This document shows, in pieces, positions 40,276 through 58,891 of a DNA stretch of 64,000 nt. The notes beneath the pieces were generated by a model. That model did no database searches, was not told the origin of the DNA, and saw nothing but the letters and a program-made list of their open reading frames with translations. The stretch lies in IMG/VR virus record IMGVR_UViG_3300042879_006196, positions 186,001-250,000 of that record. One strand, 5' to 3'. The position numbers and the translations under genes were made by a program. Each line of letters begins with the position of its first letter. Positions within the stretch are counted from its first letter, which is position 1.

Positions 40276-41202
40276 ATGTCTAATCCAATTAAATTCATTC
40301 CAGATTTAAGAGATAAAATTTTAAATCAAGTTTCTATTCTGAATGAGCAACAGAATTGGGGGCTATCTTTTATTGAAGCTTCTTATGCTTGGCAACATTC
40401 AAAAGGAGAAGATGTAAAGGTGGCAATAATAGACACAGGATGGTTTCCTCACAAAGATTTACAAGTGAATTTTTTAGATGGGTATGATGCCACTGGCAAT
40501 AATGATTTTATGGATCATGGCTCATATCATGGCACACATGTGGCTGGAATAGTTGGTGCTAATTGTGGGCAAAATATTGGCGTAATGGGTGTTGCGCCAA
40601 GCTGTAAACTTATTCCCATAAAGGCACTTGATGATGATGGCACTGGTTCATTTGATTTCATTGCAAACGCTTTACAAATCGCACACGACTTAGATGTAGA
40701 TATAATCAATATGTCTCTTGGAACAGAATCCGATTATGGTCAAAGCAAAGTACATTCATTGATAAAAGATATAACAGCAAAGGGCAAGATTGTGGTTTGT
40801 GCTAGTGGGAATGATGGAGAAGATGTAAACTTTCCAGCAAAATATGATGAATCAATTGCTGTGGCAGCTGTTGAAAATGATGGAAAATTGGCTCGTTTTT
40901 CTTCGAGAGGTCCTGAGCTTGATGTTGCGGCACCTGGTGTAAAAATTTATTCTACTTGGGGAAACAATCAATATGTGAATCTTGATGGCACATCTATGGC
41001 TTGTCCAACTATTTCTGGAATAATTGCATTGATAATTTCTTGGTATAAAAAAAATCCAGACCCAAATTTTCAAATAAATTTCACGAACATGATCAAACTT
41101 ATGTATGATTTAGGTGGACCAGAAGGTGACCATATTGTACAACAAGGATCGTATAATATTGGAGTGCCTAAATTACAAAATTTTAATCCTTGGAAAAATT
41201 AA
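40276..41202 (+). CDS. S8 subtilisin-family serine protease (intracellular-subtilisin-like), 308 aa
   Basis: Catalytic triad motifs IIDTG, HGTHVAG, GTSMACP and oxyanion CASGN; no signal peptide; short N-terminal extension containing KFIPD. Confidence 0.95.
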   Translation: MSNPIKFIPDLRDKILNQVSILNEQQNWGLSFIEASYAWQHSKGEDVKVAIIDTGWFPHKDLQVNFLDGYDATGNNDFMDHGSYHGTHVAGIVGANCGQNIGVMGVAPSCKLIPIKALDDDGTGSFDFIANALQIAHDLDVDIINMSLGTESDYGQSKVHSLIKDITAKGKIVVCASGNDGEDVNFPAKYDESIAVAAVENDGKLARFSSRGPELDVAAPGVKIYSTWGNNQYVNLDGTSMACPTISGIIALIISWYKKNPDPNFQINFTNMIKLMYDLGGPEGDHIVQQGSYNIGVPKLQNFNPWKN

Positions 41203-41204
41203 CA

Positions 41205-41825
41205 ATGTCAGAAAAAGTAACAGATAGAATACAAGAAGTGATTGCACAATCTGTGCCTGCCTCATGCACTATATTTGTAAAAACAAGAAAACAATCTTGG
41301 TCAGGAAGCGGCTTTCACATAGGAAATGGCTATGTTGTTACTGCTTCACATGTTGCACCTGAAGAATTAATGTCCAGTGGAGACGTAAAAGTAACTTTTG
41401 ATGGTTCATTATTATTGGATTGTTCAGTTTTCAAATCAGATCCTAATATAGACGCGGCTATTTTAAAAATTGAATCAGATTGGTCAAATATTCCTTCTGT
41501 AGTTTTAGCAAACTCAGACGCTGTTGAATTGGGTGAAACTGTTGCAGTTATAGGCGCGCCAGAAATGTTTCATGACACAGTAACGGTTGGAAGAGTAAGC
41601 AATACAGATCAATCACTAGGAGATGCCGCCCCATCTCCAGCTTGGAATAATATAATGTTTGTTGATGCAAAAATCATACAAGGAGTAAGCGGCGGAATGT
41701 GCGTTGGCACAGATGGTCTTGTAATTGGTTCAGTAATTGGAGTCACAGGGATGCTTGCAGAATATGGTGTAGGTGAGAATGTTATTTGTCCTTCCAATAA
41801 AATAATTAATCTTTTGAAAAGTTAA
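41205..41825 (+). CDS. Trypsin-like (S1, HtrA-type protease domain) serine protease without PDZ
   Basis: GSGFHI..VVTASHV, DAAILK, GVSGG. ATG at 41205 preferred over the track's TTG at 41190 because it follows the S8 stop. Confidence 0.9.
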   Translation: MSEKVTDRIQEVIAQSVPASCTIFVKTRKQSWSGSGFHIGNGYVVTASHVAPEELMSSGDVKVTFDGSLLLDCSVFKSDPNIDAAILKIESDWSNIPSVVLANSDAVELGETVAVIGAPEMFHDTVTVGRVSNTDQSLGDAAPSPAWNNIMFVDAKIIQGVSGGMCVGTDGLVIGSVIGVTGMLAEYGVGENVICPSNKIINLLKS

Positions 41826-41829
41826 TTAG

Positions 41830-41835
41830 TATAAT
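41830..41835 (+). promoter_or_regulatory. TATAAT -10 box 6 nt upstream of the dnaJ ATG (candidate leaderless promoter)
   Basis: tagTATAATatctatATG; no Shine-Dalgarno is present. Confidence 0.5.
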
Positions 41836-41841
41836 ATCTAT

Positions 41842-42798
41842 ATGGATTATTATTCAATACTTGAATTAGATAGAACGGCGTCTCCCGAAGATATCAAAAA
41901 ATCTTACAGAAAACTAGCAAAACAATATCATCCAGATGTAAACCCCAACGATCCAATATCTGAGGAAAAATTTAAACAAGTAAGTGAAGCATATGAAGTT
42001 CTTTCAGATGAACAAAAAAAACACAACTATGATACTTATGGTAATGTAAATGGTGGGGGTTTTACTGATTTTGGTTTCAATATCAATTTTGATCCTGGTT
42101 CAATATTTGAAGAATTTTTTGGACCCAGGAGGCAACCTGAAAGAAATACTGATCTGCAAATTGAATTGCAATTACAATTAAAGGATTTTGTTAAAGGCTG
42201 CGTTCATACTGTCAAAATCAATAAAAGAAAAAAATGCCTTGATTGTGACGGATTAGGGGGATTTGATTTCAATGCATGCCCTGACTGCAATGGCTCTGGC
42301 ATGATTCAACATTCCAGTTTTAACCATATGTTTTTTGTTCAAACATCTCCTTGTGGCAGATGTAGTGCCAAGGGCAAAATTCCACAAAGACAATGTGATA
42401 AATGTAACGTTACTGGATTCATTAATTACGTTTCAGAAATTAATATCAATATTCCTGAAAATTGTCCAATATTTGCTACTTTACAACTTCAAGGTCAAGG
42501 TAATCAAGAAAAAAATAATTTACCTCCTGGAAATTTGTTTGTAAGACTTGTTCCAGTCTCAAACGGCTTTGAAGTAGATCATGAGGGCAACGTTAAGTTG
42601 ATCAAAGAAATTAATTTGCAAAATTGGGTAAATAACGAAGAAATTTCAATTGATAGATTTGGAATAGAAGCATTCAAATTTTCATTGTATAATTTAAGTA
42701 GCTCTGATAGTCAAATCAAATTTGATGGGATGGGCGCAAAGAATGCAAATAACAGCCGCCAAGGTGACTTTATAGTAGCATTCAGAATAACTAAATAA
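41842..42798 (+). CDS. dnaJ: DnaJ (class A) co-chaperone, 318 aa
   Basis: J-domain with HPD (KQYHPDVN), short G/F region, four Cys repeats ([32 protein letters not shown]) and C-terminal domain ([13 protein letters not shown]). Confidence 0.95.
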
Positions 42799-42802
42799 GG
42801 AG
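42796..42802 (+). promoter_or_regulatory. Shine-Dalgarno TAAGGAG for the 65-aa ORF
   Basis: TAAGGAG lies 10 nt upstream of the ATG at 42813. Confidence 0.7.
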
Positions 42803-42812
42803 AAATAAAAAT

Positions 42813-43010
42813 ATGGCAATGATTAAACAAGGAAAATCAGGAAAAATCAAACAAGTAATTGTTGACGATGTTGAGCATACACCTGCTCCAGACTTACAGT
42901 GGTCTGATGTTGTTATCAAAGACGTTCTTGATGTTCCAACTAGAACAGAACACGTATTGGATGTTGACCTAGACGAAACTGACGGCGATGAAATTGCAGT
43001 AAGAGTTTAA
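42813..43010 (+). CDS. Small acidic hypothetical protein, 65 aa
   Basis: Strong SD upstream and terminator immediately downstream. Confidence 0.8.
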   Translation: MAMIKQGKSGKIKQVIVDDVEHTPAPDLQWSDVVIKDVLDVPTRTEHVLDVDLDETDGDEIAVRV

Positions 43011-43013
43011 ACT

Positions 43014-43041
43014 AAGATCCCAGCAATCTGGGATCTTTTTT
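43014..43041 (+). terminator. Intrinsic (rho-independent) terminator
   Basis: Perfect 10-bp stem AAGATCCCAG-CAAT-CTGGGATCTT continuing into a T run. Confidence 0.85.
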
Positions 43042-43063
43042 GTATTTATTTCGTAAATTATTT

Positions 43064-44707
43064 GTGCTGCAAATTAATTTAAATAATGATTATGCCAGTG
43101 TTTCTGGAGAGTATGATAAAAAAACTATTGATCTCATCAATGAAACCTGCTCATATAAAGTGCCAGATGCCGAGTGGTCTGCTAAATTCCAAAATGGCAC
43201 TTGGAATGGCAAAATTAGCTTGTTTAGTAGGCGAACCATGTCTTTTCCAGCTGGAATATTTAACATCGTTTTAAAAGCTTTGAAAGACAATAATATTAAA
43301 TTTGTCTTCAACGATTGTAGACCAAAACCTAAAATACAAAAGTTAGCACAAGTTGATTTAGGTGAACATTCTTTCAGAGATTATCAACAGGAAGCAATAA
43401 AAAAAATCAAAGAAAAAACTCGTGGCATTCTGGCTATGTGCACTGGTGCTGGAAAAACAAAATCTTCTTGTGGTATCATTTCAGAGCTATCGGTTTACCC
43501 AGTTATTTTTGTGGTGCCTTCTGTATCTTTGTTGAAACAAACAGTTTCAGAATTCAAAAGTTCTTTAAAGCCTTTGGATCCTAATTTCAAAATTGGTGAG
43601 ATAGGTGGAGGCAAATGCGACATAGCTCACCACGGTGTAAATGTCGCAACTTATCAAACTCTTTTAACTGCTTTTGATAAAAAATATTCAGAGCAGAGCA
43701 AAAAAGTTGTTGATGTAGTAATTGATAATACGACATTGCCAGGTCTTGAAAAACAATTGAAAATTCTCAAAGTAGATTTAGAAAACTCACCAGTGAAAAA
43801 AACTAAAAGTATTGAGAAAAAAATTAAAGATTTACAAAACAAAATTTCTGCAAAACTTAAGTTTTTTGATAATAAAAAACAATTAAGAGATCTTGTAGGA
43901 AATTGTCAACTTTTAATTATTGATGAAACACATATTGCCGCTTCTGTTATTGAATGTATATCCCTTAAAGCTTCTAATGCTTATTACAAATGTGGACTTT
44001 CAGGAACTCCAAGGCGGTTAGATAACCAAGACGTAAGAATGTTTGGTAGCACTGGTCCTATTATTCATAAAGTTACTTCTTCAGATTTAATAAAAAGGGG
44101 GTTTTTGACCAAACCTTACATTTACATTGTTGATTTAGATTTTATAGACAAATCTGCTCCCTCTCATCCTGAAACTTACAAGAAAGCCATAGTTAATAAT
44201 GTTCAAAGAAATGAACTAATTCGAGATTTTGCTATAGAAATGAAAGCAGAAGGCAGACCAACTTTAATTTTAGTGGAAAGACTTGAGCATGGAAAAATTT
44301 TAGAAGAAATGATCGAAGATTGTGTCTTTGTTCCTGGCGGAGATGGCTCAGATGATAAAGAAATTCCTGATAAAGAACTAGATTATCGTCGCTATCAATT
44401 AAATAGACTTGAAAACAATGAGATTATAATGGCTGCCACTTCTTGGGCATACACTGGTATTGATGCCCCTAAGATAAGCTGTATTATTCTTGCATGTTCA
44501 ATCTCTTCTCCTAACACAATTACTCAACAAATTGGAAGAGGATTAAGAAATGCTCCAGGCAAAAAAGATTGTGTCATCATTGACTTCAAACATAAAGAAA
44601 AATCTTTAAGGCAACATCATTTTTCAAAAATGAAAGTTTATAATTCTGAAGAAGAATTTGTTGTAAAAATTTTGAAGTATAATAGTAACAAAGGAACTTA
44701 TGTTTAA
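43064..44707 (+). CDS. uvsW: SF2 DNA helicase, UvsW-like
   Basis: Q-motif FRDYQ, Walker A CTGAGKT, IIDETH, GLSGTP, TQQIGRGLR; N-terminal SYKVPDAEWSAKFQNGTWNGKISLF..FPAG matches the UvsW pattern. The track's TTG at 43040 lies in the terminator T-run, so GTG at 43064 is preferred. Confidence 0.75.
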   Translation: MLQINLNNDYASVSGEYDKKTIDLINETCSYKVPDAEWSAKFQNGTWNGKISLFSRRTMSFPAGIFNIVLKALKDNNIKFVFNDCRPKPKIQKLAQVDLGEHSFRDYQQEAIKKIKEKTRGILAMCTGAGKTKSSCGIISELSVYPVIFVVPSVSLLKQTVSEFKSSLKPLDPNFKIGEIGGGKCDIAHHGVNVATYQTLLTAFDKKYSEQSKKVVDVVIDNTTLPGLEKQLKILKVDLENSPVKKTKSIEKKIKDLQNKISAKLKFFDNKKQLRDLVGNCQLLIIDETHIAASVIECISLKASNAYYKCGLSGTPRRLDNQDVRMFGSTGPIIHKVTSSDLIKRGFLTKPYIYIVDLDFIDKSAPSHPETYKKAIVNNVQRNELIRDFAIEMKAEGRPTLILVERLEHGKILEEMIEDCVFVPGGDGSDDKEIPDKELDYRRYQLNRLENNEIIMAATSWAYTGIDAPKISCIILACSISSPNTITQQIGRGLRNAPGKKDCVIIDFKHKEKSLRQHHFSKMKVYNSEEEFVVKILKYNSNKGTYV

Positions 44708-45053
44708 ATCTGTAGTTTTTGGTATGCCTTCAAAATGCCCTAATCGGAATTGTCACGCAATTTTTTATAAAGACTGTCATAAAGGCTGGCTTCCAAAATC
44801 TGAGTTAGAGATTTTTGCTATCATGAGATGTTCAGCTTGTCGTGACACATTTGCTATTGCTCAAATGATTCACATGGTGCATGAATACAAACAAAATCTT
44901 CCAGAAAGAGAAGTGGTTAAAAATCAAATTACAATATTTACCGAAAAAGATCAAGAAACTTTTAGAAAAGAATTATTTTCTGATGATAACCCTCTTTGGA
45001 ATTTGTATGATGGTTATTTCCCAGGTGCTTTAGATTTACCTGAAGATGTATAA
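44700..45053 (+). CDS. Hypothetical Cys-rich (putative Zn-binding) protein, 117 aa
   Basis: CPNRNC and CSAC motifs; coupled to the helicase stop. Confidence 0.7.
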   Translation: MFKSVVFGMPSKCPNRNCHAIFYKDCHKGWLPKSELEIFAIMRCSACRDTFAIAQMIHMVHEYKQNLPEREVVKNQITIFTEKDQETFRKELFSDDNPLWNLYDGYFPGALDLPEDV

Positions 45054-45054: not shown

Positions 45055-45061
45055 AATAAAT

Positions 45062-46687
45062 ATGGGAATATTTATTGGCTGTGATTTAGGCACAACAAAT
45101 TCTGTTGTTTGCTTTAAAAATTCAAAAAATGAATTTGAATTTGTTAAAGATGAATCAGGAAACAAACTTATTCCATCTGTAGTTTGCTATGCTGATGAGC
45201 TATATGTTGGTAGAGAAGCGGTTGAAAATGAAGAAAATTTTCCTGAAAAAACTATAAGATCTTCTAAAAGATTTATTGGTAATAATAATTCTGATTATGA
45301 CGCAACAGAAGTTGCCAAGCATATCTTAGAGTATTTAAAAAGCATAACAGAATCTCACTCAAAAGAAGCAATTGAAGGCTTAGTAATCACTGTGCCAGCT
45401 TATTTTAATCAAAATCAAAGATTAGAAACTAAAAAAGCTGCTGAACTAGCTGGTTTTAAAGTCTTAAGAATTATTAATGAGCCTACCGCTGCCGCCTTAG
45501 CATACGGGGAAGACACTAACTTAAATGAACTTGTTCTTGTGTACGATTTGGGAGGTGGCACTTTCGATGTAACACTGTTACAGTTATCTGATGATAAAGT
45601 TTATCAGGTGTTAGCGACTTCAGGAAATACAAAACTTGGAGGAGATGATTTTGATAATTTGTTAGTAAATTACATTATTGGCGAGATACCACATCATTTC
45701 AATGAATTTAAAGATTTTCAAGTTAGGCTTAAAAAATTTGCCGAAGAAATAAAAATACAATTAAATTATAAATCTAAGGTGAGCAAAACTTTAAAATATT
45801 GTGGATTATTACATGGTAAACTTTATCATCACAAAGTAGAAATATTAAAAGAAGATTATGAAAAAATGATTCATCCTCTATTACTCAAAACAAAATCTCA
45901 TGTTTTGACAGCTTTAAACGATGCAGACAAAAAAATATCTAATTTGTCTAAAATTATTTTAGTTGGTGGCTCAACAAAATCAAAAATTGTTAGAGAATTT
46001 GTTGAAAAAGAATTTAACACAAAAGTCTTTTATGAAATTGACCCAGATTTAACTGTGAGCGCTGGAGCTGCAAATTTAGCTCACTCTATCGCCGTTAAAA
46101 ACGCTGACAGTGCCATTCTTGTAGATGTCACTCCACTATCACTTGGAATTGAAACTAAAGGGGGATTGTTGAATAAAATTATTCCTAGAAATACGAATGT
46201 ACCAGTAAGTGCTGCGCAAGACTTTATAACAGCAGAAGATAACCAAGAATCTGTGAATATCAAAATTTATCAAGGTGAAAGACCTCTTGCCAAAGATAAT
46301 GAGTTTCTTGGTGAGTTTGTGTTAAGTGGATTTGAAAAACGACCAAAAGGGCAAACAAAAATTGTTGTTAAGTTTGATATTGATGCATCGGGTTTAATTA
46401 CTGTCACTGCTTTTGATAAAATTTCAGGCTTACAGTCTGAAGTCACGTTAAAATCCTTGACTTCAGAAAAAACAAATGAGTTGCTTGATAATATTGAAGC
46501 AAGCTTACATGATGACAAAAAAATACTAGAAAAAATTGAATTAGAAGAATTAAGACAAGAAGCAAAAACTCTTATGCTAACACAAAGTATATTAAATAAA
46601 GATGAAGATTTAGAATCCACTTATGATGCTGTAAAAGATAATCTTGTTGCCCTAAAAGTTTTCATACAATCGTTAAACAATGCATAA
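45062..46687 (+). CDS. dnaK: Hsp70/DnaK chaperone (short form), 541 aa
   Basis: GCDLGTTNS, IINEPTAAALAYG, YDLGGGTFDV, ILVGGST, linker VDVTPLSLGIE and substrate-binding DNQ..V.I.IYQGER. Confidence 0.95.
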   Translation: MGIFIGCDLGTTNSVVCFKNSKNEFEFVKDESGNKLIPSVVCYADELYVGREAVENEENFPEKTIRSSKRFIGNNNSDYDATEVAKHILEYLKSITESHSKEAIEGLVITVPAYFNQNQRLETKKAAELAGFKVLRIINEPTAAALAYGEDTNLNELVLVYDLGGGTFDVTLLQLSDDKVYQVLATSGNTKLGGDDFDNLLVNYIIGEIPHHFNEFKDFQVRLKKFAEEIKIQLNYKSKVSKTLKYCGLLHGKLYHHKVEILKEDYEKMIHPLLLKTKSHVLTALNDADKKISNLSKIILVGGSTKSKIVREFVEKEFNTKVFYEIDPDLTVSAGAANLAHSIAVKNADSAILVDVTPLSLGIETKGGLLNKIIPRNTNVPVSAAQDFITAEDNQESVNIKIYQGERPLAKDNEFLGEFVLSGFEKRPKGQTKIVVKFDIDASGLITVTAFDKISGLQSEVTLKSLTSEKTNELLDNIEASLHDDKKILEKIELEELRQEAKTLMLTQSILNKDEDLESTYDAVKDNLVALKVFIQSLNNA

Positions 46688-49217: not shown

Positions 49218-49249
49218 AATTATAATTTACAATTAATTGTTGTAAAAGC

Positions 49250-51145: not shown

Positions 51146-51169
51146 ATTTAATTTTTAGTAAAATTGCAT

Positions 51170-52333: not shown

Positions 52334-53611
52334 TTATTGTATCACCGCTTGATCTTGCACTGCAAGCATGTTAGTATTATATGAAAGACTCAAAGATAAC
52401 CCCTCTACTACATTTTCAGTCCACGTAGGAGGTTTTATTGCCATACTGAAAATATCTGAATTTCTCAAATAATTATTGTTAACTAATCTGGTATAAATGG
52501 TTACGCCAAGAACAGTATCTGAAGCCGCTCCTACTTGTCTAGCCCACAAAGATGGTGTATTTGTTACTGAGCTAATGTTCAACGTTAAAAAATTAAAAAA
52601 TACAGACGAATATAAATAATTTGATGACGTTACTGTTGCAGGGTTAACATACCAAATGACGTTTGATGATAAAGTTGTTAAATCATATCCCACTTCAAAG
52701 AATTGATGTATAAAAACATAATCTGGATATATTGGCTGTATATAAACAAAGCCATTAACAATTTTAGTGATCAAATATAGTCCTGATGTTTTCCCCCCTA
52801 AAGATCCTGCGCCATCTGTTAAGACGTTTACTGCTACTACTTGATTTAGCTCTAAACTAACACTCGAAAATAAACTTGCATTTAATTTATTTTCAGAAAG
52901 TTCACTACTTAGTGTGATGCCATAATCTGCAGAGGTTAGTTTTAAATTTGCAGTTTGAGACACCCAAAAATATCCACTTGTGTTATACAATCCGTAAAAT
53001 GAATCCCCGTATTGGTCACTGACTTTAACTCTTGTAAAAATATATGATTGGTTTTGAGTTAACAATGAATTTACGCTTGCTGTGTCGCTTGAATCATCAT
53101 ATACTGTTAAATTTATACCAGTTATAGTTGTAACTCTGTATATTTTATTTTCTGAGTTAGTGGTTTGATTTTTTAGCAAAATTAAATCATTTAAATTTAA
53201 TGTGTTTGACAATACAGAAGTATAACTGGCAATTTGATAATAGTTACTGCCTATTGCAGTAAGTGTTACGTTCGTACTTTTATCTGTAGCTGAAACCAAA
53301 GGAAAAAAACATACTGTTGGGCTATTATAATTTAAAAACCTATAATCAAAGCCTCTGTCAAACCCATTCAAAGAATAATATGTGGAATTTCTGATAGAAG
53401 AAACATTTTTGTCATCAAATGACATCGAAAGTTCTAATGCATTTTGATTAGTTATAGTGAACAGAAATTGTTTATTCTGAAGATTCATGTATGTGTTATT
53501 ATCGCCATTATCAGAAATAGATAATAGCGATAATTTCGGCTCAATGACCGCATTATTTGCCACTTGATATAATCTCACATCTTGTGGCAAAGGTATATCG
53601 TTGTAGTTCAT
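52334..53611 (-). CDS. Putative virion structural protein, 425 aa
   Basis: Contains LNDLILLKNQTTNSENKIYRV and a second degenerate copy of this phage-tail motif. Confidence 0.6.
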   Translation of the reverse strand: MNYNDIPLPQDVRLYQVANNAVIEPKLSLLSISDNGDNNTYMNLQNKQFLFTITNQNALELSMSFDDKNVSSIRNSTYYSLNGFDRGFDYRFLNYNSPTVCFFPLVSATDKSTNVTLTAIGSNYYQIASYTSVLSNTLNLNDLILLKNQTTNSENKIYRVTTITGINLTVYDDSSDTASVNSLLTQNQSYIFTRVKVSDQYGDSFYGLYNTSGYFWVSQTANLKLTSADYGITLSSELSENKLNASLFSSVSLELNQVVAVNVLTDGAGSLGGKTSGLYLITKIVNGFVYIQPIYPDYVFIHQFFEVGYDLTTLSSNVIWYVNPATVTSSNYLYSSVFFNFLTLNISSVTNTPSLWARQVGAASDTVLGVTIYTRLVNNNYLRNSDIFSMAIKPPTWTENVVEGLSLSLSYNTNMLAVQDQAVIQ

Positions 53612-54966
53612 TTTCTTAATTTAAAAATGCTTGAAGCTGCAGCTGACAAAATAGATCTTTCCACTTTGTTCATTGTAATTGCTGCGGCAACTTCATGAGT
53701 TTTACTACCATTGATTGCATGAGCTAATCCACAAGAATTTTTATCAAGATACGGATTTTCTATTTGTGACATATCTCCTAATAATATAACTTTAGAATTT
53801 TTCCCACATCTTTCAACAACCATTCTTGCTTCTTTAGGGCTTACATTTTCTGCTTCATCTAAGATGATAAAACTATTTGGAATAGATCTTCCTTGAATAA
53901 AAGCCATTGCCTCCACTTCTATGATTCCTTCTTCAACCATATCTTCAAAGCTATTTCCTCCAAATTTTCCATCATACCCTTTAAAAGCTGTTAACTGTAC
54001 AATGTTGTCTTTGATTGGACCCAGCCAAGCACTTACTTTTTCTAATTTAGAACCTGGCAAAAATCCAATTTCTTTGCCACCTACGGCAACCATTGGTTTC
54101 ATAACAATTATTCTATCATATTGTCCAAGATTTACTTTTTCTAGCCCCACTGCAATAGCCATTAAAGTTTTTCCGCTACCTGCTGGTCCACTTAAGCACA
54201 CAAGAGGTATATTATCATTTGCCAACGCCTCAAGAGCAAATCTTTGCTCCATGTTCTTTGCAGTAATTCCCATGTAAGATTCTTTTTTCTTTTTGTCATC
54301 CATGAACTTAATTTCTCTTTCGTAAAACCAAGCTAACACAGACTGATTTCCAAATCTAAAACAAATAAATTCATTAGGATTTAAATTTTCTAATTGATCT
54401 TGGCAGACTAAATTTGAAATTTTGCATTCTTCTCTTTTTGACAAATATTCCCAATCTGACAATTCATTTATAGAAACAATTCTATAACCCTCAAAAAAGT
54501 TTTTCTCTGATAACAAATCACTTTTGTAATTTTCAGCAACGCAACCCCAAGATATCGCCCTTACTCTTAATCCAGTGTCTTTGGAAACCACTACTACTTT
54601 TCTTTTTGGATTTGCGGCTTTTAATGAAATTGCCGAGTCAATAATTGCATTATCAGAGTTCACTCTAGTAATAGATGGTTTTTCATTTCTCATTAAAGGT
54701 GCTTCATTGTTATAAATAAAAAGTTTGCCACCTTTTTCATTTATCACCACTCCTTTAGTCATTTGTTGAATATCATATTGATCTAAATTTCTAAAAACTT
54801 CTCTAGCCGCCCATCCTGCGGTTTCTTTTCTTGTTTTAATTTCATCTAAATCATCAATGCAAGCCAGAGGAATGTAAATATCATTTTCTTCAAATTTGTA
54901 AATACAATCTGGATCGTGCAATAATACGCATGTGTCAATTACGAAGATGTGTTTGGGTTTTGCCAT
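53608..54966 (-). CDS. phoH: PIN-PhoH (PhoH2/YlaK-like) protein, 452 aa
   Basis: N-terminal PIN (VIDTCVLLHD, NSDNAII, VSKDTGLR); PhoH ATPase GPAGSGKT, IGFLPG, QGRSI, ILDEAEN, LLGDMSQI; SD-like GAAGG upstream. Confidence 0.9.
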   Translation of the reverse strand: MAKPKHIFVIDTCVLLHDPDCIYKFEENDIYIPLACIDDLDEIKTRKETAGWAAREVFRNLDQYDIQQMTKGVVINEKGGKLFIYNNEAPLMRNEKPSITRVNSDNAIIDSAISLKAANPKRKVVVVSKDTGLRVRAISWGCVAENYKSDLLSEKNFFEGYRIVSINELSDWEYLSKREECKISNLVCQDQLENLNPNEFICFRFGNQSVLAWFYEREIKFMDDKKKKESYMGITAKNMEQRFALEALANDNIPLVCLSGPAGSGKTLMAIAVGLEKVNLGQYDRIIVMKPMVAVGGKEIGFLPGSKLEKVSAWLGPIKDNIVQLTAFKGYDGKFGGNSFEDMVEEGIIEVEAMAFIQGRSIPNSFIILDEAENVSPKEARMVVERCGKNSKVILLGDMSQIENPYLDKNSCGLAHAINGSKTHEVAAAITMNKVERSILSAAASSIFKLRK

Positions 54967-54997: not shown

Positions 54998-55006
54998 GAG
55001 TGCTAA
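54998..55006 (-). promoter_or_regulatory. Single CIRCE-like half-site TTAGCACTC upstream of phoH
   Basis: 9/9 match to one CIRCE arm; the partner arm is absent at the N9 spacing. Confidence 0.2.
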
Positions 55007-55013
55007 CCCTCCT

Positions 55014-55859
55014 TTAAAGTTTATCAAGGAAATCAGCTGCATTTTCATCGAATTTTGTTGAAAATAACTTTAAATTTTGCAAGTATTCCAATACTTTTCT
55101 GTCTTTATCGATAGCTTCATTAACTTTTTTTGTTTTTAAAACATTATTATTTTTTGAGACAAAAGTATCATTCAATATAGACTGTATATCACTTTTGATG
55201 TTTTCTTTGTTCTCAAAGTACTTAGAAATGTCAGACGCTCTTGAAGATTCGATTAATATTTTATCATTAAATGTAAGCATAATTGAATTATCATAAGCTA
55301 CATTGGTGGTTGCCAAAGTCTTTGAAGGAACAAATAAACACACTAAAACAGAAAGTGAATCATCAGAGTACAGGTTGTGTGAAAGCTCTGCGAGTTCTTC
55401 TGACAAATTTATAACGTTCAAACATAATTCTAAGTTTGTGTCAAGTATTTTGAAGATCCATTCATAAACATCTTCTGAAGTTGTTGGTTTGTATAAGGGC
55501 TTTAAGTTCAAATCCGTTTTCCAGTCAGAAATTAAATCAAAAAGTTGGTTTCCTAGTTTAGAAGCTAGAGAATTTTTATCAAACCAATTAAAATTATTAT
55601 CATTAATACCTAAAGAGACATTGGTTTCTTTTGAGTTATCTTCAATCAGTTTTTGTTTGCTTTTCATTAAAAACTTAAAGTCTTCATCTTTTCCGCCATA
55701 GTCTGGATGATATTTACGAGCTAATTTTCTGAAGTTTGCTTCCACCAACTTACACAATTCTTGTTTATTTACATTGTCATTTTTAATTGGAATGTCATTT
55801 TTTTCTATCTCCAAAAAATCTAAATATAGTTGATTATCAATGTAAAATTTTTCAATCAT
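55014..55859 (-). CDS. Class C J-domain protein with novel C-terminal domain, 281 aa
   Basis: NFRKLARKYHPDYGGKDEDFKFL matches J-domain helices II-III with HPD. Confidence 0.8.
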   Translation of the reverse strand: MIEKFYIDNQLYLDFLEIEKNDIPIKNDNVNKQELCKLVEANFRKLARKYHPDYGGKDEDFKFLMKSKQKLIEDNSKETNVSLGINDNNFNWFDKNSLASKLGNQLFDLISDWKTDLNLKPLYKPTTSEDVYEWIFKILDTNLELCLNVINLSEELAELSHNLYSDDSLSVLVCLFVPSKTLATTNVAYDNSIMLTFNDKILIESSRASDISKYFENKENIKSDIQSILNDTFVSKNNNVLKTKKVNEAIDKDRKVLEYLQNLKLFSTKFDENAADFLDKL

Positions 55860-56430
55860 CTATAAATTGTACAGTTAAGCTTGAAAAATCTATAGTTAAT
55901 TTAGTTTCATTCAAATCGAAGTAATTGAATTTATTTTTAATTAAGGTTTTTGACATTTTTTCAGCAAGATGAGGGTTTTTAAAATTCTTGAAAGATAATG
56001 ATCTCAATTTTTTGTTGTCTAATTTATCTTCATTTTTTGTTAAAAGTAAATATTTAAAAAGATTGTTTTCAAAATCTCTAAAATCATTTTTAAATGAAAT
56101 CATTTCATTCAAAGAGAATTGATCATACAAATTGAATATAAATTCTTCAATTTTAATTTTTTTCTTTAAACCCAAGCATTGAAGCTGTATTTTTGAAAAA
56201 AAATCAATAGGTTCGCCATAAATTTGATGAAGAATTTCATTTTCAATCAGAAAAACACGAACTGGTTTATTTTTGATAAATTCAACCACCAATAAATCGC
56301 CCGATTTTACTTCATTTATAATCAAAGATAAAGGAGGTAAATTATTTGTAAATATAGTTTCTATCACTGTTGAAAAAGGATAGCTAATTTTCTTATAAGT
56401 TTTATTAATCAAACATTTGAATTCATGCAC
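55852..56430 (-). CDS. Hypothetical protein, 192 aa
   Basis: ORF track; coupled overlaps. Confidence 0.7.
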   Translation of the reverse strand: MHEFKCLINKTYKKISYPFSTVIETIFTNNLPPLSLIINEVKSGDLLVVEFIKNKPVRVFLIENEILHQIYGEPIDFFSKIQLQCLGLKKKIKIEEFIFNLYDQFSLNEMISFKNDFRDFENNLFKYLLLTKNEDKLDNKKLRSLSFKNFKNPHLAEKMSKTLIKNKFNYFDLNETKLTIDFSSLTVQFIDD

Positions 56431-56959
56431 TGATAATATTATTCACTATGTTATCGTCATATTCATTCAAGTACGAACTAGATTTACTCCATTTATACTT
56501 CCAAACTTGATTTAATTTATGACAAATTACTTTTGTTGTAATACATGACATATCATCTAAATGTGCAGCATTTGATTTCAAGAAATTTTTTCTTTCAATG
56601 CTCCTCAGATTTAAGTTGAAAAGTTTTTTGAACTTGTTTGGAAGATAATCAAAAAAGTCATCATTTTTATCAAAACACAATCTGCACAAATCAAACACAA
56701 TCTCATATTCTATGTCTTCTAAAAAAGAATCTAAAAAATTTTCTTCAATTATTTCAAAGTATTTTTTATCCATTTCAACAAAATGAAATTCATCCTTTGT
56801 TAAAAAATTTTTCACTTTAGACAATTTCAATCTAGTGTTTTTTTTAATAATAAATCTGGGTATACCAAAAAGATTTTTTTGTTTTGCTACACATGAAGCA
56901 ATGAAATTTTCTGCTTCATGTTCATTCAATTCCTCTAAAATAACATTTAATTTATTCAA
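56423..56959 (-). CDS. Hypothetical protein, 178 aa
   Basis: ORF track; coupled overlaps. Confidence 0.7.
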   Translation of the reverse strand: MNKLNVILEELNEHEAENFIASCVAKQKNLFGIPRFIIKKNTRLKLSKVKNFLTKDEFHFVEMDKKYFEIIEENFLDSFLEDIEYEIVFDLCRLCFDKNDDFFDYLPNKFKKLFNLNLRSIERKNFLKSNAAHLDDMSCITTKVICHKLNQVWKYKWSKSSSYLNEYDDNIVNNIISA

Positions 56960-57189
56960 TTTATTTTTAATTCATCCACTGCTTGTTGAACGAATGGTGT
57001 TACCAAGCCATAATCGTCGTGAATTCGCACATGATTTAGCCTTCCGTGTTTTTCTTTTAAAATTTCTATCACTCTGTTGATAAAAAAAGTTAACTGTCTT
57101 GCCGAAGGAAACTCTTCTTTTATTGAAAGGTATTTCCTTTGGATAAGTTTTGATGCTATATATCTTATCAACTTTTCTTCAAAATTCAT
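56956..57189 (-). CDS. Hypothetical protein (~77 aa; weak GntR-like FPSARQL segment)
   Basis: ATG at 57189 overlaps the upstream TGA (ATGA), so it is preferred to 57207; the GntR recognition helix is not evident. Confidence 0.6.
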   Translation of the reverse strand: MNFEEKLIRYIASKLIQRKYLSIKEEFPSARQLTFFINRVIEILKEKHGRLNHVRIHDDYGLVTPFVQQAVDELKIN

Positions 57190-57389
57190 TTTACCATTCT
57201 TACCCAAGCTACATTTTGAGATGGGACATTTAATAAGGTGATTTTAAAATTCGCATCTTCAAAGATTGTGTGGTGATCTTTTGTGATCATTAAAAAACCT
57301 TTGATTGATGGCAGCATTTTGTTTGGATTGTAAATTTCAATAATCCATTCACCGTATCCTCTATTTAAAGGTATCATTTCGTTTCCCAC
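57186..57389 (-). CDS. Hypothetical small beta-rich protein, 67 aa
   Basis: First gene of the minus-strand run after the divergent gap 57390-57451. Confidence 0.6.
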   Translation of the reverse strand: MGNEMIPLNRGYGEWIIEIYNPNKMLPSIKGFLMITKDHHTIFEDANFKITLLNVPSQNVAWVRMVK

Positions 57390-57451
57390 AAATTAATATT
57401 TAAGCTAATAAAAGTTTAATGCCTTGCGTATATTGAAATAAGAAACAAATT

Positions 57452-58891
57452 ATGAGAAAAAAAGACTCTAAAACTGAAAATTGTACTATTTGTGCAGCTC
57501 CTGTAGATCCATCCAACGCATTTGTGTTTTATTTTAACAATCAAGAACACTTTTTCTGTGAATCTCATGAAAGACCATTCAAAATGGGCATTGATATTGG
57601 TCAAATAGAAATGAACTCAAAGTTTATATCTTTTATCTCTGATTTACCAGACCCTACCCCTAAAAATGAATTAAAATCTGCATTAAGGCAATTCATTCCT
57701 ATGACAAAAATGCAAGATCCAGAATTCAAGGAAAAAGAAAATTTTATATTATCTACAAAAATTTCTAGCCCCAAACAACTGTTCGATGAAATAGGTAAAA
57801 CAGTAATTGGTCAAGATGAGGCTAGAAAAACTATTTCAGTTTCTGTAATCAACCATTTACAATTGCTAAACCAAGATGTGGAGCAAGTTACACAATCTGA
57901 CAAGCATCATGTTTTAATGCTTGGCAAGTCAGGTTCAGGTAAAACTTTAATTGCAAATACTGTTGCAAATCTTTTCAATTTACCATTTGCCGTAGGAGAT
58001 GCTACAAATTACTCCCCTACTGGTTTTCAAGGATCTGATGCAGAGTCTATCATACATGATCTTTTGTTTAAAGCAGATATGAATTTTGATTTAGCCGAGA
58101 GAGGGATTGCATTTATTGATGAAATTGACAAAATTTGTAGTTCAAATAAATCTTCTGGAAGGTATGAATCTTTTATTGGATCAACACAATCCACTCTATT
58201 GAAACTAGTAGAAGGCAAAACTATTAAAGTACCAAGCACAGTCTTGGGTGATGGACCTGGAGCGCCATATGACTGCAGCTCGGAAAGAGTGTTGTTCTTC
58301 TTAGGTGGCGCCTTTAATGGCTTATCAGAAATTCTTGCCAAAAAGATGGGAATGAAAGAAAGGTCTGTTGGATTTATCAAAACACATGATGAAAAAAGTA
58401 AAGATATTGATGAAGCAATGAAGTCATATGAAATTTTTTCACAAGCTTCGCGTGAGGATATGGTAGAGTCTTTAATTGAATTTGGAATGCTTTCCGAACT
58501 AGTAGGAAGAATTCCATCGATAGTTGCTCTTAAGCCCTTGAGCAAAGAAGATTTAACAAAAGTTTTAGTTGAGTCCACTGTATCTCCGTTAGAAAAACAA
58601 AAGTATATTTTTGAAAAATCTGGTTATAAATTGGAATTCACTGAAGAATTCATCAAAGCAACTGTAGAAAAATCTTACAAATCAGCTGTTGGCACCAGGG
58701 CTCTTGATTCATATGTCAAAAAAGCTGTTAGCGCCGCTAGTTTTGATTTATTGTCTTTGATTAATGTGTCTGGGTCAAAAGGCACAGTACTTATCACAGA
58801 TGAGTGTTTAACAAACCCTGCCGCTTATCAAACTAGTAAAATTCTTGTTGCCAGCAGTCCTGTGTCTTTTCAAAATTCATTAACCATCTAA
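57452..58891 (+). CDS. clpX: ClpX-family AAA+ unfoldase, 479 aa
   Basis: VIGQDEARKTISVSVINH, Walker A GKSGSGKT, DAT..S.TGFQGSDAE, Walker B IAFIDEIDKI, QSTLLKLVEG, GGAFNGL, FGMLSELVGRIP, GTRAL; N-terminal Zn finger. Confidence 0.9.
   Translation: MRKKDSKTENCTICAAPVDPSNAFVFYFNNQEHFFCESHERPFKMGIDIGQIEMNSKFISFISDLPDPTPKNELKSALRQFIPMTKMQDPEFKEKENFILSTKISSPKQLFDEIGKTVIGQDEARKTISVSVINHLQLLNQDVEQVTQSDKHHVLMLGKSGSGKTLIANTVANLFNLPFAVGDATNYSPTGFQGSDAESIIHDLLFKADMNFDLAERGIAFIDEIDKICSSNKSSGRYESFIGSTQSTLLKLVEGKTIKVPSTVLGDGPGAPYDCSSERVLFFLGGAFNGLSEILAKKMGMKERSVGFIKTHDEKSKDIDEAMKSYEIFSQASREDMVESLIEFGMLSELVGRIPSIVALKPLSKEDLTKVLVESTVSPLEKQKYIFEKSGYKLEFTEEFIKATVEKSYKSAVGTRALDSYVKKAVSAASFDLLSLINVSGSKGTVLITDECLTNPAAYQTSKILVASSPVSFQNSLTI

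What the first reader, a model, noticed from the sequence alone, without database searches (positions are those of the whole stretch)
40276..58891. Phage-encoded protein maturation and quality-control kit lacking GrpE and ClpP in the window
Seen: directly after 36 kb of giant virion genes come S8 and S1 proteases, class A DnaJ and DnaK, with a second J-protein and ClpX further on. No grpE, clpP or groEL/ES occurs in this window. Established: Hsp70 cycles use J-proteins plus a nucleotide exchange factor, and ClpX normally acts with ClpP. Inference: the phage supplies the specificity components (J-proteins, Hsp70, unfoldase) to fold and process 1000-4000-aa virion proteins, and borrows host GrpE/ClpP or works without them.
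Basis: partly seen in the sequence, partly recalled or inferred. Interest (0 to 1): 0.62.

Follow-up and report, generated by a model that had tools for sequence, protein, structure and literature searches.

The report
Jumbo-phage chaperone and protease gene set
A 347-kb uncultivated tailed phage carries its own conserved protein-folding and protein-degradation genes, including two different Hsp70s, one of which has lost the sequence features that normally make Hsp70 depend on the exchange factor GrpE.

Summary
The window is part of a 347,392-bp tailed-phage record with a terminase, a portal and 23 tRNAs.

Whole-genome searches change the interpretation. The phage does encode ClpP (catalytic triad intact), a GroEL, a tmRNA and a second, canonical DnaK. 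GrpE, GroES, SmpB and HSP20 were not found, and GrpE absence was checked in two ways.

The S8-to-ClpX segment is syntenic in relatives whose Hsp70 is only 63% identical. The 541-aa Hsp70 belongs to a metagenome-only clade on a long, fully supported stem, so it is not a recent host pick-up. The clade has lost the K55-E267 salt bridge and the GrpE signature. It has charge-swapped R56/E264 to E/K and changed arch residue M404 to K. The second DnaK keeps every one of these features.

I infer one GrpE-independent, specialised Hsp70 and one DnaK that would have to use host GrpE.

The proposed link to giant virion proteins is not supported. Adjacency of the giant genes to S8 is broken in a relative, and nothing shows the giant proteins are virion parts or clients.

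The parts
40276..41202 (+). Subtilisin-like S8 serine protease, 308 aa. It has no signal peptide and no propeptide domain.
   Evidence: Pfam PF00082, 175 bits. The IIDTG, HGTHVAG and GTSMACP motifs can be read in the sequence. It is 63-71% identical in relatives and about 40% identical to proteases of SPO1-like Bacillus phages.
41190..41825 (+). Trypsin-fold S1 protease (HtrA-like core without PDZ). The likely real start is the ATG at 41205.
   Evidence: Pfam Trypsin_2, 66 bits. The TASHV, DAAILKI and GVSGG motifs are present. It is 69-71% identical in relatives.
41842..42798 (+). Class A J-domain protein (DnaJ), 318 aa.
   Evidence: J domain 92 bits, zinc finger and DnaJ_C. HPD and all 8 zinc-finger cysteines are kept, and the C-terminal dimerisation tail is missing. 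TIGR02349 scores 251, below the 377 cut-off.
42813..43010 (+). Small acidic ORF of 65 aa, conserved in position in relatives. It is followed by a terminator-like hairpin at 43014-43037.
   Evidence: 49-54% identity. The hairpin was found. It is not conserved in relatives, where the gap is only 11-17 nt.
43040..44707 (+). UvsW-like SF2 helicase.
   Evidence: ResIII, UvsW_N and Helicase_C. It is 61-70% identical in relatives.
44700..45053 (+). 117-aa protein with four cysteines (C13, C18, C44, C47), zinc-ribbon-like and of unknown function. It overlaps the helicase stop by 8 nt and ends 8 nt before the Hsp70 start.
   Evidence: the four cysteines are invariant and identity is 68-70%. It has no family hit. 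The structure model was of low confidence.
45062..46687 (+). Short, divergent Hsp70 of 541 aa. The ATPase motifs and interdomain linker are intact. The nucleotide-cleft latch is remodelled, the GrpE signature is lost, arch residue 404 is K, and the lid is shortened.
46680..47309 (+). RNase HII. Its start overlaps the Hsp70 stop by 8 nt.
   Evidence: Pfam, 113 bits. It holds the same position in relatives.
47653..48168 (+). Protein with a bifunctional-nuclease (BFN) domain.
   Evidence: Pfam scores 21 bits, below the cut-off. The same family is recorded for the orthologues in relatives.
48165..54966 (-). Conserved minus-strand block. It holds a 350-aa protein, a tail-tube-like protein (49250-50191), proteins of 188, 136, 387 and 425 aa, and PIN-PhoH (53608-54966).
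   Evidence: Phage_tube_2 scores 29.7 bits, above the 27 cut-off, and PhoH plus PIN_4 are found. Synteny is shown.
55014..55859 (-). Class C J-protein of 281 aa. It has a minimal J-domain with HPD and a conserved C-terminal domain of unknown function.
   Evidence: HPD is invariant in alignment A6. It is 54% identical in relatives.
55852..56959 (-). Two conserved ORFs of unknown function (192 and 178 aa) at the head of the minus-strand block.
   Evidence: Searches gave no family hit. Both are conserved in L098 and L102.
57452..58891 (+). ClpX-like AAA+ unfoldase of 479 aa, with an unusual N-terminal Cys/His domain.
   Evidence: NF003745 scores 249.7 bits, below the cut-off. Walker A/B, the Arg finger and sensor-2 are kept. 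The ClpP-docking loop reads VGF (MGF in a relative), the pore-1 loop reads GFQG, and there is no RKH loop. It holds the same position in relative L102 at 56% identity.

Best explanation
The segment is a vertically inherited core region of an uncultivated tailed jumbo-phage lineage of about 350 kb. Together with genes elsewhere in the genome it gives the phage its own protein-folding and protein-degradation machinery.

Shown by the searches:
1. A phage-specific short Hsp70 with an intact ATPase, linker and J-docking residues, a class A DnaJ and a class C J-protein.
2. A ClpX with a ClpP-docking loop, plus a true ClpP with an intact triad 80 kb away and a tmRNA 2.9 kb from that ClpP.
3. A GroEL without GroES.
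4. A second, canonical DnaK.
5. No GrpE, GroES or SmpB.

Inferred:
- The short Hsp70 cycles nucleotide without an exchange factor, as HscA and HscC do, and serves a narrowed client set delivered by the two phage J-proteins.
- The canonical DnaK, the GroEL and the tmRNA rely on the host's GrpE, GroES and SmpB.
- ClpX and ClpP work together as a phage protease, with substrate choice altered by the changed N-domain and pore loop.
- The likeliest role of the whole set is to keep the phage's own proteome folding, assembling and being cleared during infection, rather than to serve the giant proteins in particular.

The roles of the S8 and S1 proteases remain open. They are cytoplasmic, lack regulatory domains and lie about 75 kb from the head module.
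For: Phage identity: terminase and portal, a tail-tube-like gene, 23 tRNAs and CheckV completeness of 99%.

Vertical inheritance:
- About 50 protein clusters at 60-99% identity, all 487-553 aa, sit on contigs of up to 370 kb. The next hits drop to 53% and then 43% or less.
- The clade has 100% SH-aLRT support on a stem of 1.34 substitutions per site.
- Gene order from S8 to ClpX is identical in relatives with 63-79% Hsp70 identity.
- Kit genes are better conserved (54-79%; DnaJ 43-46%) than the neighbouring unannotated proteins of the tail-tube block (p350, p387, p425: 38-53%).

Nucleotide-cleft latch, across 49 clade members:
- Position 55 is V, I, A or L, never K or R.
- Position 56 is E or D, position 59 is E or D, position 264 is K in 43 of 49, and position 267 is always E.
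- The YITA..G.P.H GrpE signature is replaced, and M404 is K in all 49.
- R167 is kept in all 49 and D477 is D or E in 47.
- Mayer 2021 (PMC8215388) links loss of the K55-E267 and R56-E264 bridges in HscA to 700-fold faster ADP release and to independence from GrpE.

Internal control: the second DnaK of the same genome, and all 72 members of its clade, keep K55, R56, E/D264, E267 and the signature. It passes the DnaK equivalog cut-offs.

External control: the four huge phages that do encode GrpE all have Hsp70s with the DnaK-type latch.

GrpE absence.

ClpXP. ClpP scores 288 bits for ClpP against 88 bits for the ClpP-related head-maturation protease. ClpP occurs on the same contigs as Hsp70 clade members (239,548, 207,455 and 149,752 bp).

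tmRNA.

GroEL passes the equivalog cut-off and no Cpn10 was found.
Against: - Nothing was measured. Independence from an exchange factor is read from sequence alone.
- One cleft bridge may survive as a charge swap (E56-K264), which would predict only a moderate speed-up.
- The segment corresponding to the GrpE signature is changed but not deleted, unlike in HscA.
- Six other GrpE-less Hsp70-encoding phage records among those compared carry ordinary DnaK-type Hsp70s. Lack of GrpE therefore does not require a remodelled Hsp70.
- No client is known.
- The complex prediction of Hsp70 with the second J-protein gave no verdict.
- A structural analogue of GrpE or GroES without sequence similarity, like T4 gp31, cannot be excluded.
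- In one relative ClpP is missing from the position it holds here, between the NAGPA-like and LAGLIDADG genes. ClpX-ClpP pairing may therefore not hold across the whole lineage.
- ClpP, the second DnaK and the tmRNA all lie in the last 26 kb of a record that IMG/VR labels 'provirus'. I argue that they are phage genes, on three grounds: the same G+C content as the rest of the genome, homing endonucleases and TnpB among them, and an internal position on the 370-kb contig of a relative. This rests on context only.
Confidence: 0.6

Rival explanations
1. One reading: the kit is dedicated to folding and proteolytically processing the 1000-4000-aa giant proteins encoded directly upstream.
For: - S8 starts 33 nt after the 3069-aa ORF on the same strand.
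- The same arrangement is seen in relatives L003 and L100.
- The giant block is also present in the L098 genome.
- The module sits among tail- and adhesin-like genes: tail tube, lectin domains and propellers.
- No S77 or S78 prohead protease was found.
Against: - In L098/L101 the giant block is transcribed away from S8. It is separated from S8 by three genes that lie upstream of the block, on the other strand, in this genome.
- Co-occurrence was seen only within one lineage, so it is a single evolutionary observation.
- There is no evidence that the giant proteins are virion parts, are cleaved, or bind the chaperones.
- The Hsp70 is translationally coupled to a helicase and RNase HII, not to the giant genes.
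Confidence: 0.2
2. Host takeover or counter-defence: the chaperones and proteases act on host proteins. Examples would be holding the heat-shock sigma factor, disarming defence systems that sense or need DnaJ, and degrading host factors through ClpXP, S8 or S1.
For: - Phage RB43 encodes a J-protein that acts on host DnaK and sigma-32, and the moraphage paper discusses counter-defence roles (PMC12619734).
- Iyer et al. 2021 propose that patchily distributed phage peptidases, with ClpP the most prominent, target the host (PMC7824862).
- The canonical DnaK and the ClpP are host-like. Their nearest named relatives are Armatimonadota, at 60-62% and 69-73% identity.
Against: - The short Hsp70, DnaJ, ClpX, S8 and S1 are core genes, syntenic and far from any cellular homologue. 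They do not show the patchy pattern expected of arms-race genes.
- No defence or anti-defence genes were recognised next to them. The PADLOC library was not scanned.
Confidence: 0.2
3. A replication-linked Hsp70: the short Hsp70 remodels replication or recombination complexes, as host DnaK/DnaJ do for lambda O-P-DnaB and P1 RepA.
For: - The helicase, the 117-aa ORF, Hsp70 and RNase HII overlap or are 8 nt apart, and a BFN-domain nuclease gene lies further downstream. The order helicase, 117-aa ORF, Hsp70, RNase HII, BFN is kept in all relatives examined.
- Precedents for chaperone-driven replication-complex remodelling are listed in Mayer 2021.
- The changed substrate arch (K404) and the exchange-factor-free design fit a narrow client range.
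Against: - Gene order in phages often reflects timing rather than partnership.
- A class A DnaJ with zinc finger and client-binding domains points to unfolded-protein clients.
- The second J-protein sits in the tail-gene block.
- No interaction was tested.
Confidence: 0.15
4. The genes are recent, independent host acquisitions or host DNA at the edge of a provirus, and have no joint function.
For: - IMG/VR labels the record 'provirus', and the source contig is 356,595 bp against 347,392 bp kept.
- ClpP, the canonical DnaK and the tmRNA lie within 26 kb of the right end.
- ClpP is 73% identical to a Fimbriimonadaceae chromosomal ClpP.
Against: - For the window's genes this is refuted. The Hsp70 clade is monophyletic, sits on a long stem and is at most 43% identical to bacterial DnaK. 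Synteny is strict.
- ClpP and the second DnaK have their own clades at 84-100% and 64-100% identity on the same long phage contigs. In a relative they lie 80-100 kb from the contig end, among homing endonucleases and TnpB.
- G+C is uniform at 0.31-0.35 over the right end.
Confidence: 0.05

Closest known systems
Bacterial DnaK-DnaJ-GrpE system
   Same: The Hsp70 has an actin-fold ATPase with the DLGTTNS, DLGGGTFD and VGGST motifs, the DVTPLSLGIET linker, and the J-docking residues R167 and D477. The DnaJ is class A, with HPD and four CXXCXGXG repeats.
   Different: - No GrpE.
- The K55-E267 bridge and the V59/L257 patch are lost, and R56/E264 are swapped to E/K.
- The GrpE signature is replaced.
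- M404 is K.
- The lid is shortened and there is no C-terminal tail (541 aa against about 610-640).
- Scores fall below every DnaK equivalog cut-off.
HscA/HscB and HscC/DjlC, the specialised bacterial Hsp70s that need no exchange factor
   Same: Loss of the cleft salt bridges and of GrpE-contact features, and a changed substrate arch. Mayer 2021 ties these properties to a small client set. Like HscC and many non-proteobacterial DnaKs, the protein also lacks the lobe I insert.
   Different: - It is not a member of either family: HscA models score 469 bits against a 709 cut-off, and the PRK11678 model, which I take from memory to be the HscC model, scores 77 against 331.
- The 290-295 segment is present rather than deleted.
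- The partner is a class A DnaJ, not HscB.
- With E. coli HscA as the single outgroup, the clade branches among insert-less DnaK-type sequences.
Phage-encoded DnaK/DnaJ of moraphages, Lak megaphages and other huge phages
   Same: These are large uncultivated phages carrying Hsp70 and DnaJ (PMC12619734; tblastn hits). Of 26 Hsp70-encoding phage records including this one, 20 have DnaJ, 16 ClpP, 7 ClpX and 6 a tmRNA.
   Different: - Seven of the eight moraphage DnaKs nest inside Flavobacteriaceae, which suggests recent transfer. The Hsp70 here is far from all cellular sequences.
- Lak-A2, LR756504, LR756502 and LR745206 also encode GrpE and have DnaK-type latches.
- Two Hsp70 paralogues of contrasting type in one phage were not described in the papers I found.
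Phage J-protein Rki of RB43, and DnaJ-only jumbo phages
   Same: A phage-encoded J-domain with HPD.
   Different: Those phages recruit host DnaK (PMC12619734; PMC7824862). Here the phage brings its own Hsp70s as well.
Bacterial ClpXP with tmRNA tagging, and the ClpP and ClpX genes scattered among jumbo phages
   Same: An AAA+ ClpX with a [V/M]GF docking loop, a ClpP with a Ser-His-Asp triad, and a full-length tmRNA.
   Different: - The N-terminal domain is CxxC...CxxH plus about 45 extra residues, not the canonical C4 zinc-binding domain.
- The pore-1 loop reads GFQG, not GYVG.
- There is no RKH loop.
- The tmRNA tag ends in MVA rather than LAA.
- No SmpB was found.
- clpX and clpP lie 80 kb apart.
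Phage GroEL-like chaperonins
   Same: A full-length GroEL that passes the equivalog cut-off, in a genome with no detectable GroES. It is 44-46% identical to chaperonins in 291 phage records.
   Different: It lies outside the reported window. Whether it works alone or with host GroES is unknown.

Membership tests
DnaK (generalist bacterial Hsp70), tested on the short Hsp70 at 45062-46687 | Score above the NCBIfam DnaK equivalog cut-offs | tested here: not met
   NF001413 scores 450 against 648, and TIGR02350 scores 437 against 823.
DnaK (generalist bacterial Hsp70), tested on the short Hsp70 | Hsp70 ATPase motifs, interdomain linker and J-domain docking residues | tested here: met
   Alignments to Geobacillus and E. 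coli DnaK. R167 is kept in 49 of 49 clade members and D477 is D or E in 47 of 49.
DnaK (generalist bacterial Hsp70), tested on the short Hsp70 | Cleft salt bridges K55-E267 and R56-E264, and the GrpE signature motif (Mayer 2021) | tested here: not met
   Position 55 is hydrophobic. Positions 56 and 264 are swapped to E/D and K. The signature reads YCGLLHGKLYH.
DnaK (generalist bacterial Hsp70), tested on the short Hsp70 | A GrpE partner encoded alongside | tested here: not met
   No GrpE in six frames of the genome.
HscA | Equivalog score, and deletion of the 290-295 segment | tested here: not met
   TIGR01991 scores 469 against 709. The segment is present. With E. coli HscA as the single outgroup, the clade branches among DnaK-type sequences.
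HscC | Equivalog score | tested here: not met
   NF008673 (PRK11678), listed only as 'molecular chaperone' and taken from memory to be the HscC model, scores 77 against 331.
DnaK, tested on the second Hsp70 at G000:333717-335582 | Equivalog score, both salt bridges and the GrpE signature | tested here: met
   NF001413 scores 878, above 648, and TIGR02350 scores 851, above 823. K55, R56, E264, E267 and YITA..G.P.H are all kept.
Class A J-domain protein (DnaJ) | J domain with HPD, a Gly/Phe stretch, four CXXCXGXG repeats and the C-terminal client-binding domains | tested here: met
   The G/F stretch is short and the dimerisation tail is absent. The equivalog score is not reached (251 against 377).
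J-domain protein, tested on the second J-protein at 55014-55859 | J domain with the HPD tripeptide | tested here: inconclusive
   Pfam scores 20.5-22.6 bits, below the 27.8 cut-off. KYHPD is present and invariant in relatives. The binding prediction gave no verdict.
ClpX | AAA+ module with Walker A/B, Arg finger and sensor-2, plus the ClpP-docking [LIVM]-G-F loop | tested here: met
ClpX | Equivalog score, the C4 N-terminal zinc-binding domain and the GYVG pore loop | tested here: not met
   The scores are 250 against 359 and 227 against 371. The N-domain is CxxC...CxxH with an insert, and the pore loop reads GFQG.
ClpP | Family score and the Ser-His-Asp triad | tested here: met
   NF001368 scores 288, above 249. 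The head-maturation model scores 88, below 120. S111, H136 and D185 are conserved.
GroEL/GroES | A GroEL equivalog with a GroES partner | tested here: inconclusive
   GroEL (TIGR02348) scores 614.5, above 582. No Cpn10 was found. A gp31-like analogue cannot be excluded by sequence.
HtrA/DegP | A trypsin-fold protease with PDZ domain(s) | tested here: not met
   Only the protease core matches (residues 30-180). There is no PDZ domain, and all scores fall far below the cut-offs.
Prohead maturation protease | Family S77, S78 or ClpP-related, located in the head module | tested here: not met
   No S77 or S78 was found. S8 and S1 lie about 75 kb from the terminase and portal.

The most novel reading that the evidence does not exclude
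The 541-aa protein founds a phage-only Hsp70 subfamily, comparable in standing to HscA and HscC. It would run without any exchange factor through a remodelled, charge-swapped nucleotide-cleft latch, paired with its own class A and class C J-proteins. It would work side by side with a conventional DnaK that plugs into host GrpE.

More broadly, the phage encodes the ATP-driven engines (two Hsp70s, GroEL, ClpX) and a tmRNA. It omits the small cofactors GrpE, GroES and SmpB, and it may run a ClpXP-tmRNA degradation route with its own specificity: the tag ends in MVA, the pore loop reads GFQG and the N-domain is new.
Probability: 0.35. Interest if true: 0.65.

Novelty: new variant of a known kind. 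Interest (0 to 1): 0.5.

Why it matters
How Hsp70s are tuned to do without an exchange factor has been studied mainly in HscA and HscC.

This phage clade offers a natural, independently evolved case, with about 50 sequence variants. A conventional DnaK in the same genome serves as a built-in comparison. The sequence prediction can be tested directly with nucleotide-release and refolding assays.

The finding also corrects a tempting picture. This phage does not lack ClpP or GroEL. It lacks only the small cofactors, which says something about which parts of proteostasis a large virus must bring itself and which it can take from the host.

The host-like ClpP and DnaK give a first, tentative pointer to Armatimonadota as hosts of this lineage.

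Tried and rejected
- **Structure of the 117-aa zinc-ribbon-like ORF** (5-sequence alignment): mean pLDDT 49.5, unusable, so no fold search was run. The Atlas look-up returned only unnamed viral and bacterial clusters.
- **Complex prediction** of Hsp70 (residues 1-500) with the second J-protein (residues 1-100): score 0.30 against a mark of 0.34. No verdict, and not evidence either way.
No read or expression data could be laid, and no habitat information was obtained.
- **The idea that the Hsp70 N-terminus is truncated** was rejected. It simply lacks the lobe I insert, like Geobacillus DnaK.
- **The idea that ClpP is a head-maturation protease** was rejected on scores.
- **The idea that S8 or S1 is the prohead protease** was made less likely by position, but it was not excluded.
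- **Promoter and terminator scans**: counts were no higher than in shuffled sequence. One strong hairpin at 43014-43037 is not conserved in relatives.
- **Terminase Pfam models** PF03237 and PF17289 found nothing. PHROGs did find the terminase and portal.
- **The giant proteins** gave no informative family beyond propeller and Ig-like domains.
- **Donor claims**: I did not build trees for DnaJ, ClpX, ClpP or GroEL. Statements about donors are limited to 'nearest named relatives'.

Full report
**1. Observation**

| Gene | Coordinates | Evidence |
|---|---|---|
| S8 subtilase | 40276-41202 | Pfam 175 bits |
| Trypsin-fold S1 protease, no PDZ | 41190-41825 | Trypsin_2, 66 bits; probable start 41205 |
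| Class A DnaJ | 41842-42798 | J domain, zinc finger, DnaJ_C |
| Hsp70 | 45062-46687 | Pfam 424 bits |
| Second J-protein | 55014-55859, minus strand | Pfam below cut-off; KYHPD present |
| ClpX-like AAA+ ATPase | 57452-58891 | NF003745, 249.7 bits, below cut-off |

The HPD of the second J-protein is invariant in relatives.

Seven ORFs of 620-4138 aa fill 241-40243. That they are virion proteins is unproven. They match only NHL and RCC1-like propellers, a glycine-rich domain and short Ig-like stretches.

The kit genes are interleaved with a UvsW-like helicase, RNase HII, a MerC-like protein, a BFN nuclease, PIN-PhoH and a tail-tube-like gene.

**2. What the genome is**

The window is bases 186001-250000 of a 347,392-bp IMG/VR virus record with CheckV completeness of 99%. 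The record has:
- a terminase large subunit and a portal at 126-139 kb;
- 23 tRNAs and a tmRNA;
- many homing endonucleases;
- 33.6% G+C throughout.

It is a tailed jumbo phage.

**3. The rest of the kit**

Genome-wide searches change the picture.

Present elsewhere in the genome:
- ClpP at 324774-325349. It is 51% identical to E. coli ClpP, with the Ser-His-Asp triad intact. It scores as true ClpP and not as a ClpP-related head protease.
- A GroEL at 266230-267849, which passes the equivalog cut-off.
- A full-length tmRNA at 321534-321917, 2.9 kb from clpP. Its tag is AKKNRRNGFGSAQAGFAMVA.
- A second Hsp70 at 333717-335582, which passes the DnaK equivalog cut-offs.

Absent:
- GrpE. A profile built from four phage GrpEs plus E. 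coli GrpE, run with filters off over all six frames, gave a best E-value of 0.96.
- Cpn10/GroES, SmpB and HSP20.
- S77 and S78 prohead proteases.
- Any further AAA_2 protein, so there is no ClpB, ClpA or HslU.

The phage therefore brings the ATP-driven engines plus ClpP, and lacks the small cofactors.

**4. Lineage and inheritance**

The short Hsp70 has about 50 relatives at 60-99% identity. All are 487-553 aa, all come from metagenomes, and they sit on contigs of up to 370 kb. Identity then falls to 51-53% for two hits and to 43% or less for bacterial DnaKs of about 600-640 aa.

In a maximum-likelihood tree the clade has 100% support and sits on a stem of 1.34 substitutions per site. Its nearest neighbours are other phage-contig Hsp70s, among DnaK-type sequences that lack the lobe I insert.

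One gene order is the same in relatives with 63-79% Hsp70 identity:
- Plus strand: S8, S1, DnaJ, a 65-aa ORF, helicase, a 117-aa ORF, Hsp70, RNase HII, BFN.
- Minus-strand block: a 350-aa protein, tail tube, four unknowns, PIN-PhoH, J-protein and two unknowns.
- Then ClpX.

Kit proteins are among the best conserved in the segment:

| Protein | Identity in relatives |
|---|---|
| S8 | 63-71% |
| S1 | 69-71% |
| 117-aa ORF | 68-70% |
| Hsp70 | 63-79% |
| ClpX | 56% |
| J-protein | 54% |
| DnaJ | 43-46% |

This excludes recent independent host acquisition for the window's genes.

The second DnaK and ClpP have their own clades, at 64-100% and 84-100% identity, on contigs of the same lengths as those carrying short-Hsp70 clade members. 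For the 370,252-bp contig I confirmed it is one ENA scaffold that carries the second DnaK. Their nearest named cellular relatives are Armatimonadota, mostly Fimbriimonadaceae, at 60-62% for DnaK and 69-73% for ClpP. These two genes are therefore younger and host-like. They give a tentative host hint. I built no tree for them and make no donor claim.

**5. The giant genes**

In L003 and L100 a protein of about 3066 aa precedes S8, as it does here.

In the more distant relative L098/L101, S8 is preceded by genes of 123, 274 and 660 aa. In this genome their orthologues lie at 176.3-179.6 kb on the other strand. In that relative the giant block (1393, 1079 and 1688 aa with NHL, and so on) is transcribed away from them.

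The giant block and the kit therefore co-occur in the lineage, but their adjacency is a local rearrangement. Nothing links them functionally.

**6. The two Hsp70s**

Against E. coli DnaK, the short Hsp70 keeps the ATPase motifs, the linker and the J-docking residues.

Mayer 2021 (PMC8215388) states the following:
- Two salt bridges, K55-E267 and R56-E264, close the DnaK nucleotide cleft.
- Their absence in HscA accompanies 700-fold faster ADP release.
- HscA and HscC also lack the GrpE signature (residues 290-295) and need no exchange factor, which fits their small client sets.

Across 49 members of the short-Hsp70 clade:
- Position 55 is V, I, A or L.
- Position 56 is E or D.
- Position 59 is E or D.
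- Position 264 is K in 43.
- Position 267 is always E.
- The signature YITA..G.P.H is replaced by YcG...
- Arch residue M404 is K in all 49.

The lid is short and the C-terminal tail is missing.

The second DnaK, and all 72 members of its clade, keep K55, R56, E/D264, E267, the signature and the lobe I insert. The two paralogues are only 35% identical.

I compared Hsp70s from 12 further phage records drawn from the 26 in section 8.
- The four phages that encode GrpE (Lak-A2, LR756504, LR756502 and LR745206, all above 540 kb) have DnaK-type latches.
- Remodelled latches occur only in GrpE-less phage records: this clade, G002 and G003.
- Six other GrpE-less phage records keep the DnaK-type latch.

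My inference is that the short Hsp70 is a specialised chaperone that does not depend on an exchange factor, while the canonical DnaK must use host GrpE. A surviving charge-swapped E56-K264 bridge would predict an intermediate rate of nucleotide release. None of this was measured.

**7. ClpX, DnaJ and the proteases**

ClpX:
- It keeps Walker A/B, the arginine finger, sensor-2 and a VGF docking loop (MGF in a relative).
- Its pore-1 loop reads GFQG and it has no RKH loop.
- Its N-terminal domain is CxxC...CxxH plus about 45 extra residues, instead of the C4 zinc-binding domain.
- With ClpP and a tmRNA in the genome, a phage ClpXP route with altered substrate choice is plausible. This is an inference.

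DnaJ has HPD, a short Gly/Phe stretch, all eight zinc-finger cysteines and the client-binding domains. It has no dimerisation tail.

S8 and S1 have complete catalytic motifs. They have no signal peptide, propeptide or PDZ domain. Both resemble sporadic phage proteases of unknown role. They lie about 75 kb from the head module.

**8. Comparison with what is known**

- Iyer et al. 2021 surveyed 224 cultivated jumbo phages. They report scattered DnaJ, ClpP, ClpX/ClpA, HSP60 and HSP10. Hsp70 is mentioned only as the host partner of phage DnaJ (PMC7824862).
- Moraphages carry DnaK, DnaJ and HSP20. Seven of their eight DnaKs nest within Flavobacteriaceae (PMC12619734).
- In 26 Hsp70-encoding phage records I found DnaJ in 20, ClpP in 16, ClpX in 7, tmRNA in 6 and GrpE in 4.

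Phage chaperone sets are therefore a known kind. New here are:
- a deep, syntenic, phage-only Hsp70 clade with a consistently remodelled latch;
- its coexistence with a canonical DnaK;
- the pattern of engines without cofactors.

**9. Verdict**

- Observation: confirmed.
- Interpretation: partly supported. It is right on self-supplied J-proteins, Hsp70 and ClpX, and on the missing GrpE. It is wrong on ClpP and GroEL at genome level. It is unsupported on the giant-protein purpose.
- Interest: moderate. The main prediction can be tested directly in vitro.

**10. Limits**

- The complex prediction gave no verdict.
- The model of the 117-aa protein was unusable.
- Structural analogues of GrpE or GroES cannot be excluded.
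- The record carries a 'provirus' label, and ClpP, the second DnaK and the tmRNA lie near its right end. I treat them as phage genes on context: uniform G+C, homing endonucleases and TnpB among them, an internal position on a relative's 370-kb contig, and clade co-occurrence.

Noticed in passing
G000:C1:333717-335582 (minus strand), outside the window; locus L203:6325-8190: A second, canonical DnaK of 621 aa. It passes the DnaK equivalog cut-offs and keeps the GrpE-related features. Its nearest named relatives are Armatimonadota DnaKs at 60-62% identity.
   Followed up: yes
G000:C1:321534-321917, outside the window; locus L183:1035-1419: A full-length tmRNA (Rfam 108 bits) with tag AKKNRRNGFGSAQAGFAMVA, 2.9 kb upstream of clpP. 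No SmpB was found in the genome. A tmRNA is present above the cut-off in 6 of 26 Hsp70-encoding phage records, each with a different tag ending.
   Followed up: partly
G000:C1:48.9-49.2 kb, 70.5 kb and 171.4-173.3 kb: 23 tRNA genes in clusters, covering 20 amino acids, with three tRNA-Met.
   Followed up: no
window 44700-45053: A conserved 117-aa protein with four invariant cysteines, wedged between the helicase and Hsp70 with overlapping or 8-nt junctions. It is as well conserved as Hsp70, and its function is unknown.
   Followed up: partly
window 43014-43037: A strong terminator-like hairpin (10-bp stem followed by a T-run) between the DnaJ-side genes and the helicase-Hsp70 genes. It is absent in relatives, where the gap is only 11-17 nt.
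   Followed up: partly
window 14559-26975 and 3804-8849: The 4138-aa ORF contains an RCC1-like beta-propeller (residues about 3184-3479). The 1681-aa ORF contains an NHL propeller (residues about 376-561). The rest of the giant ORFs match nothing.
   Followed up: partly
L100:19851-21626 and L100:12651-13760: In a relative, the PIN-PhoH ORF is 804 aa and carries a LAGLIDADG hit, possibly an intein or homing-endonuclease insertion. A TnpB (IS605 OrfB) also sits between the MerC-like and BFN genes. This genome has a TnpB at G000:341429-342592.
   Followed up: no
window 47319-47720: A MerC-like membrane protein (Pfam 74.5 bits) lies inside the conserved block. It is present here and in L100 but absent from L098 and L099.
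   Followed up: no
L204:16498-17842 compared with G000:C1:324159-326545: In the relative on the 370-kb contig, the NAGPA-like and LAGLIDADG genes are adjacent, with no clpP between them. In this genome clpP sits exactly there, next to the homing endonuclease.
   Followed up: partly
G000:C1:263873-264826 (L201:14873-15826) and 257569-259637: A 317-aa protein with a pretoxin-HINT/intein-like domain, and two proteins with ConA-like lectin domains, lie downstream of a further giant ORF of 2792 aa that starts at window 63160.
   Followed up: no
G000:C1:6433-7545 and 8361-9869: An ATP-dependent DNA ligase and a NAMPT/NAPRTase-family enzyme (NAD salvage) lie at the left end of the genome.
   Followed up: no
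G000:C1:72591-76598 and 303189-306014: Three paralogous proteins carry repeated phrog_3532 domains of unknown function.
   Followed up: no
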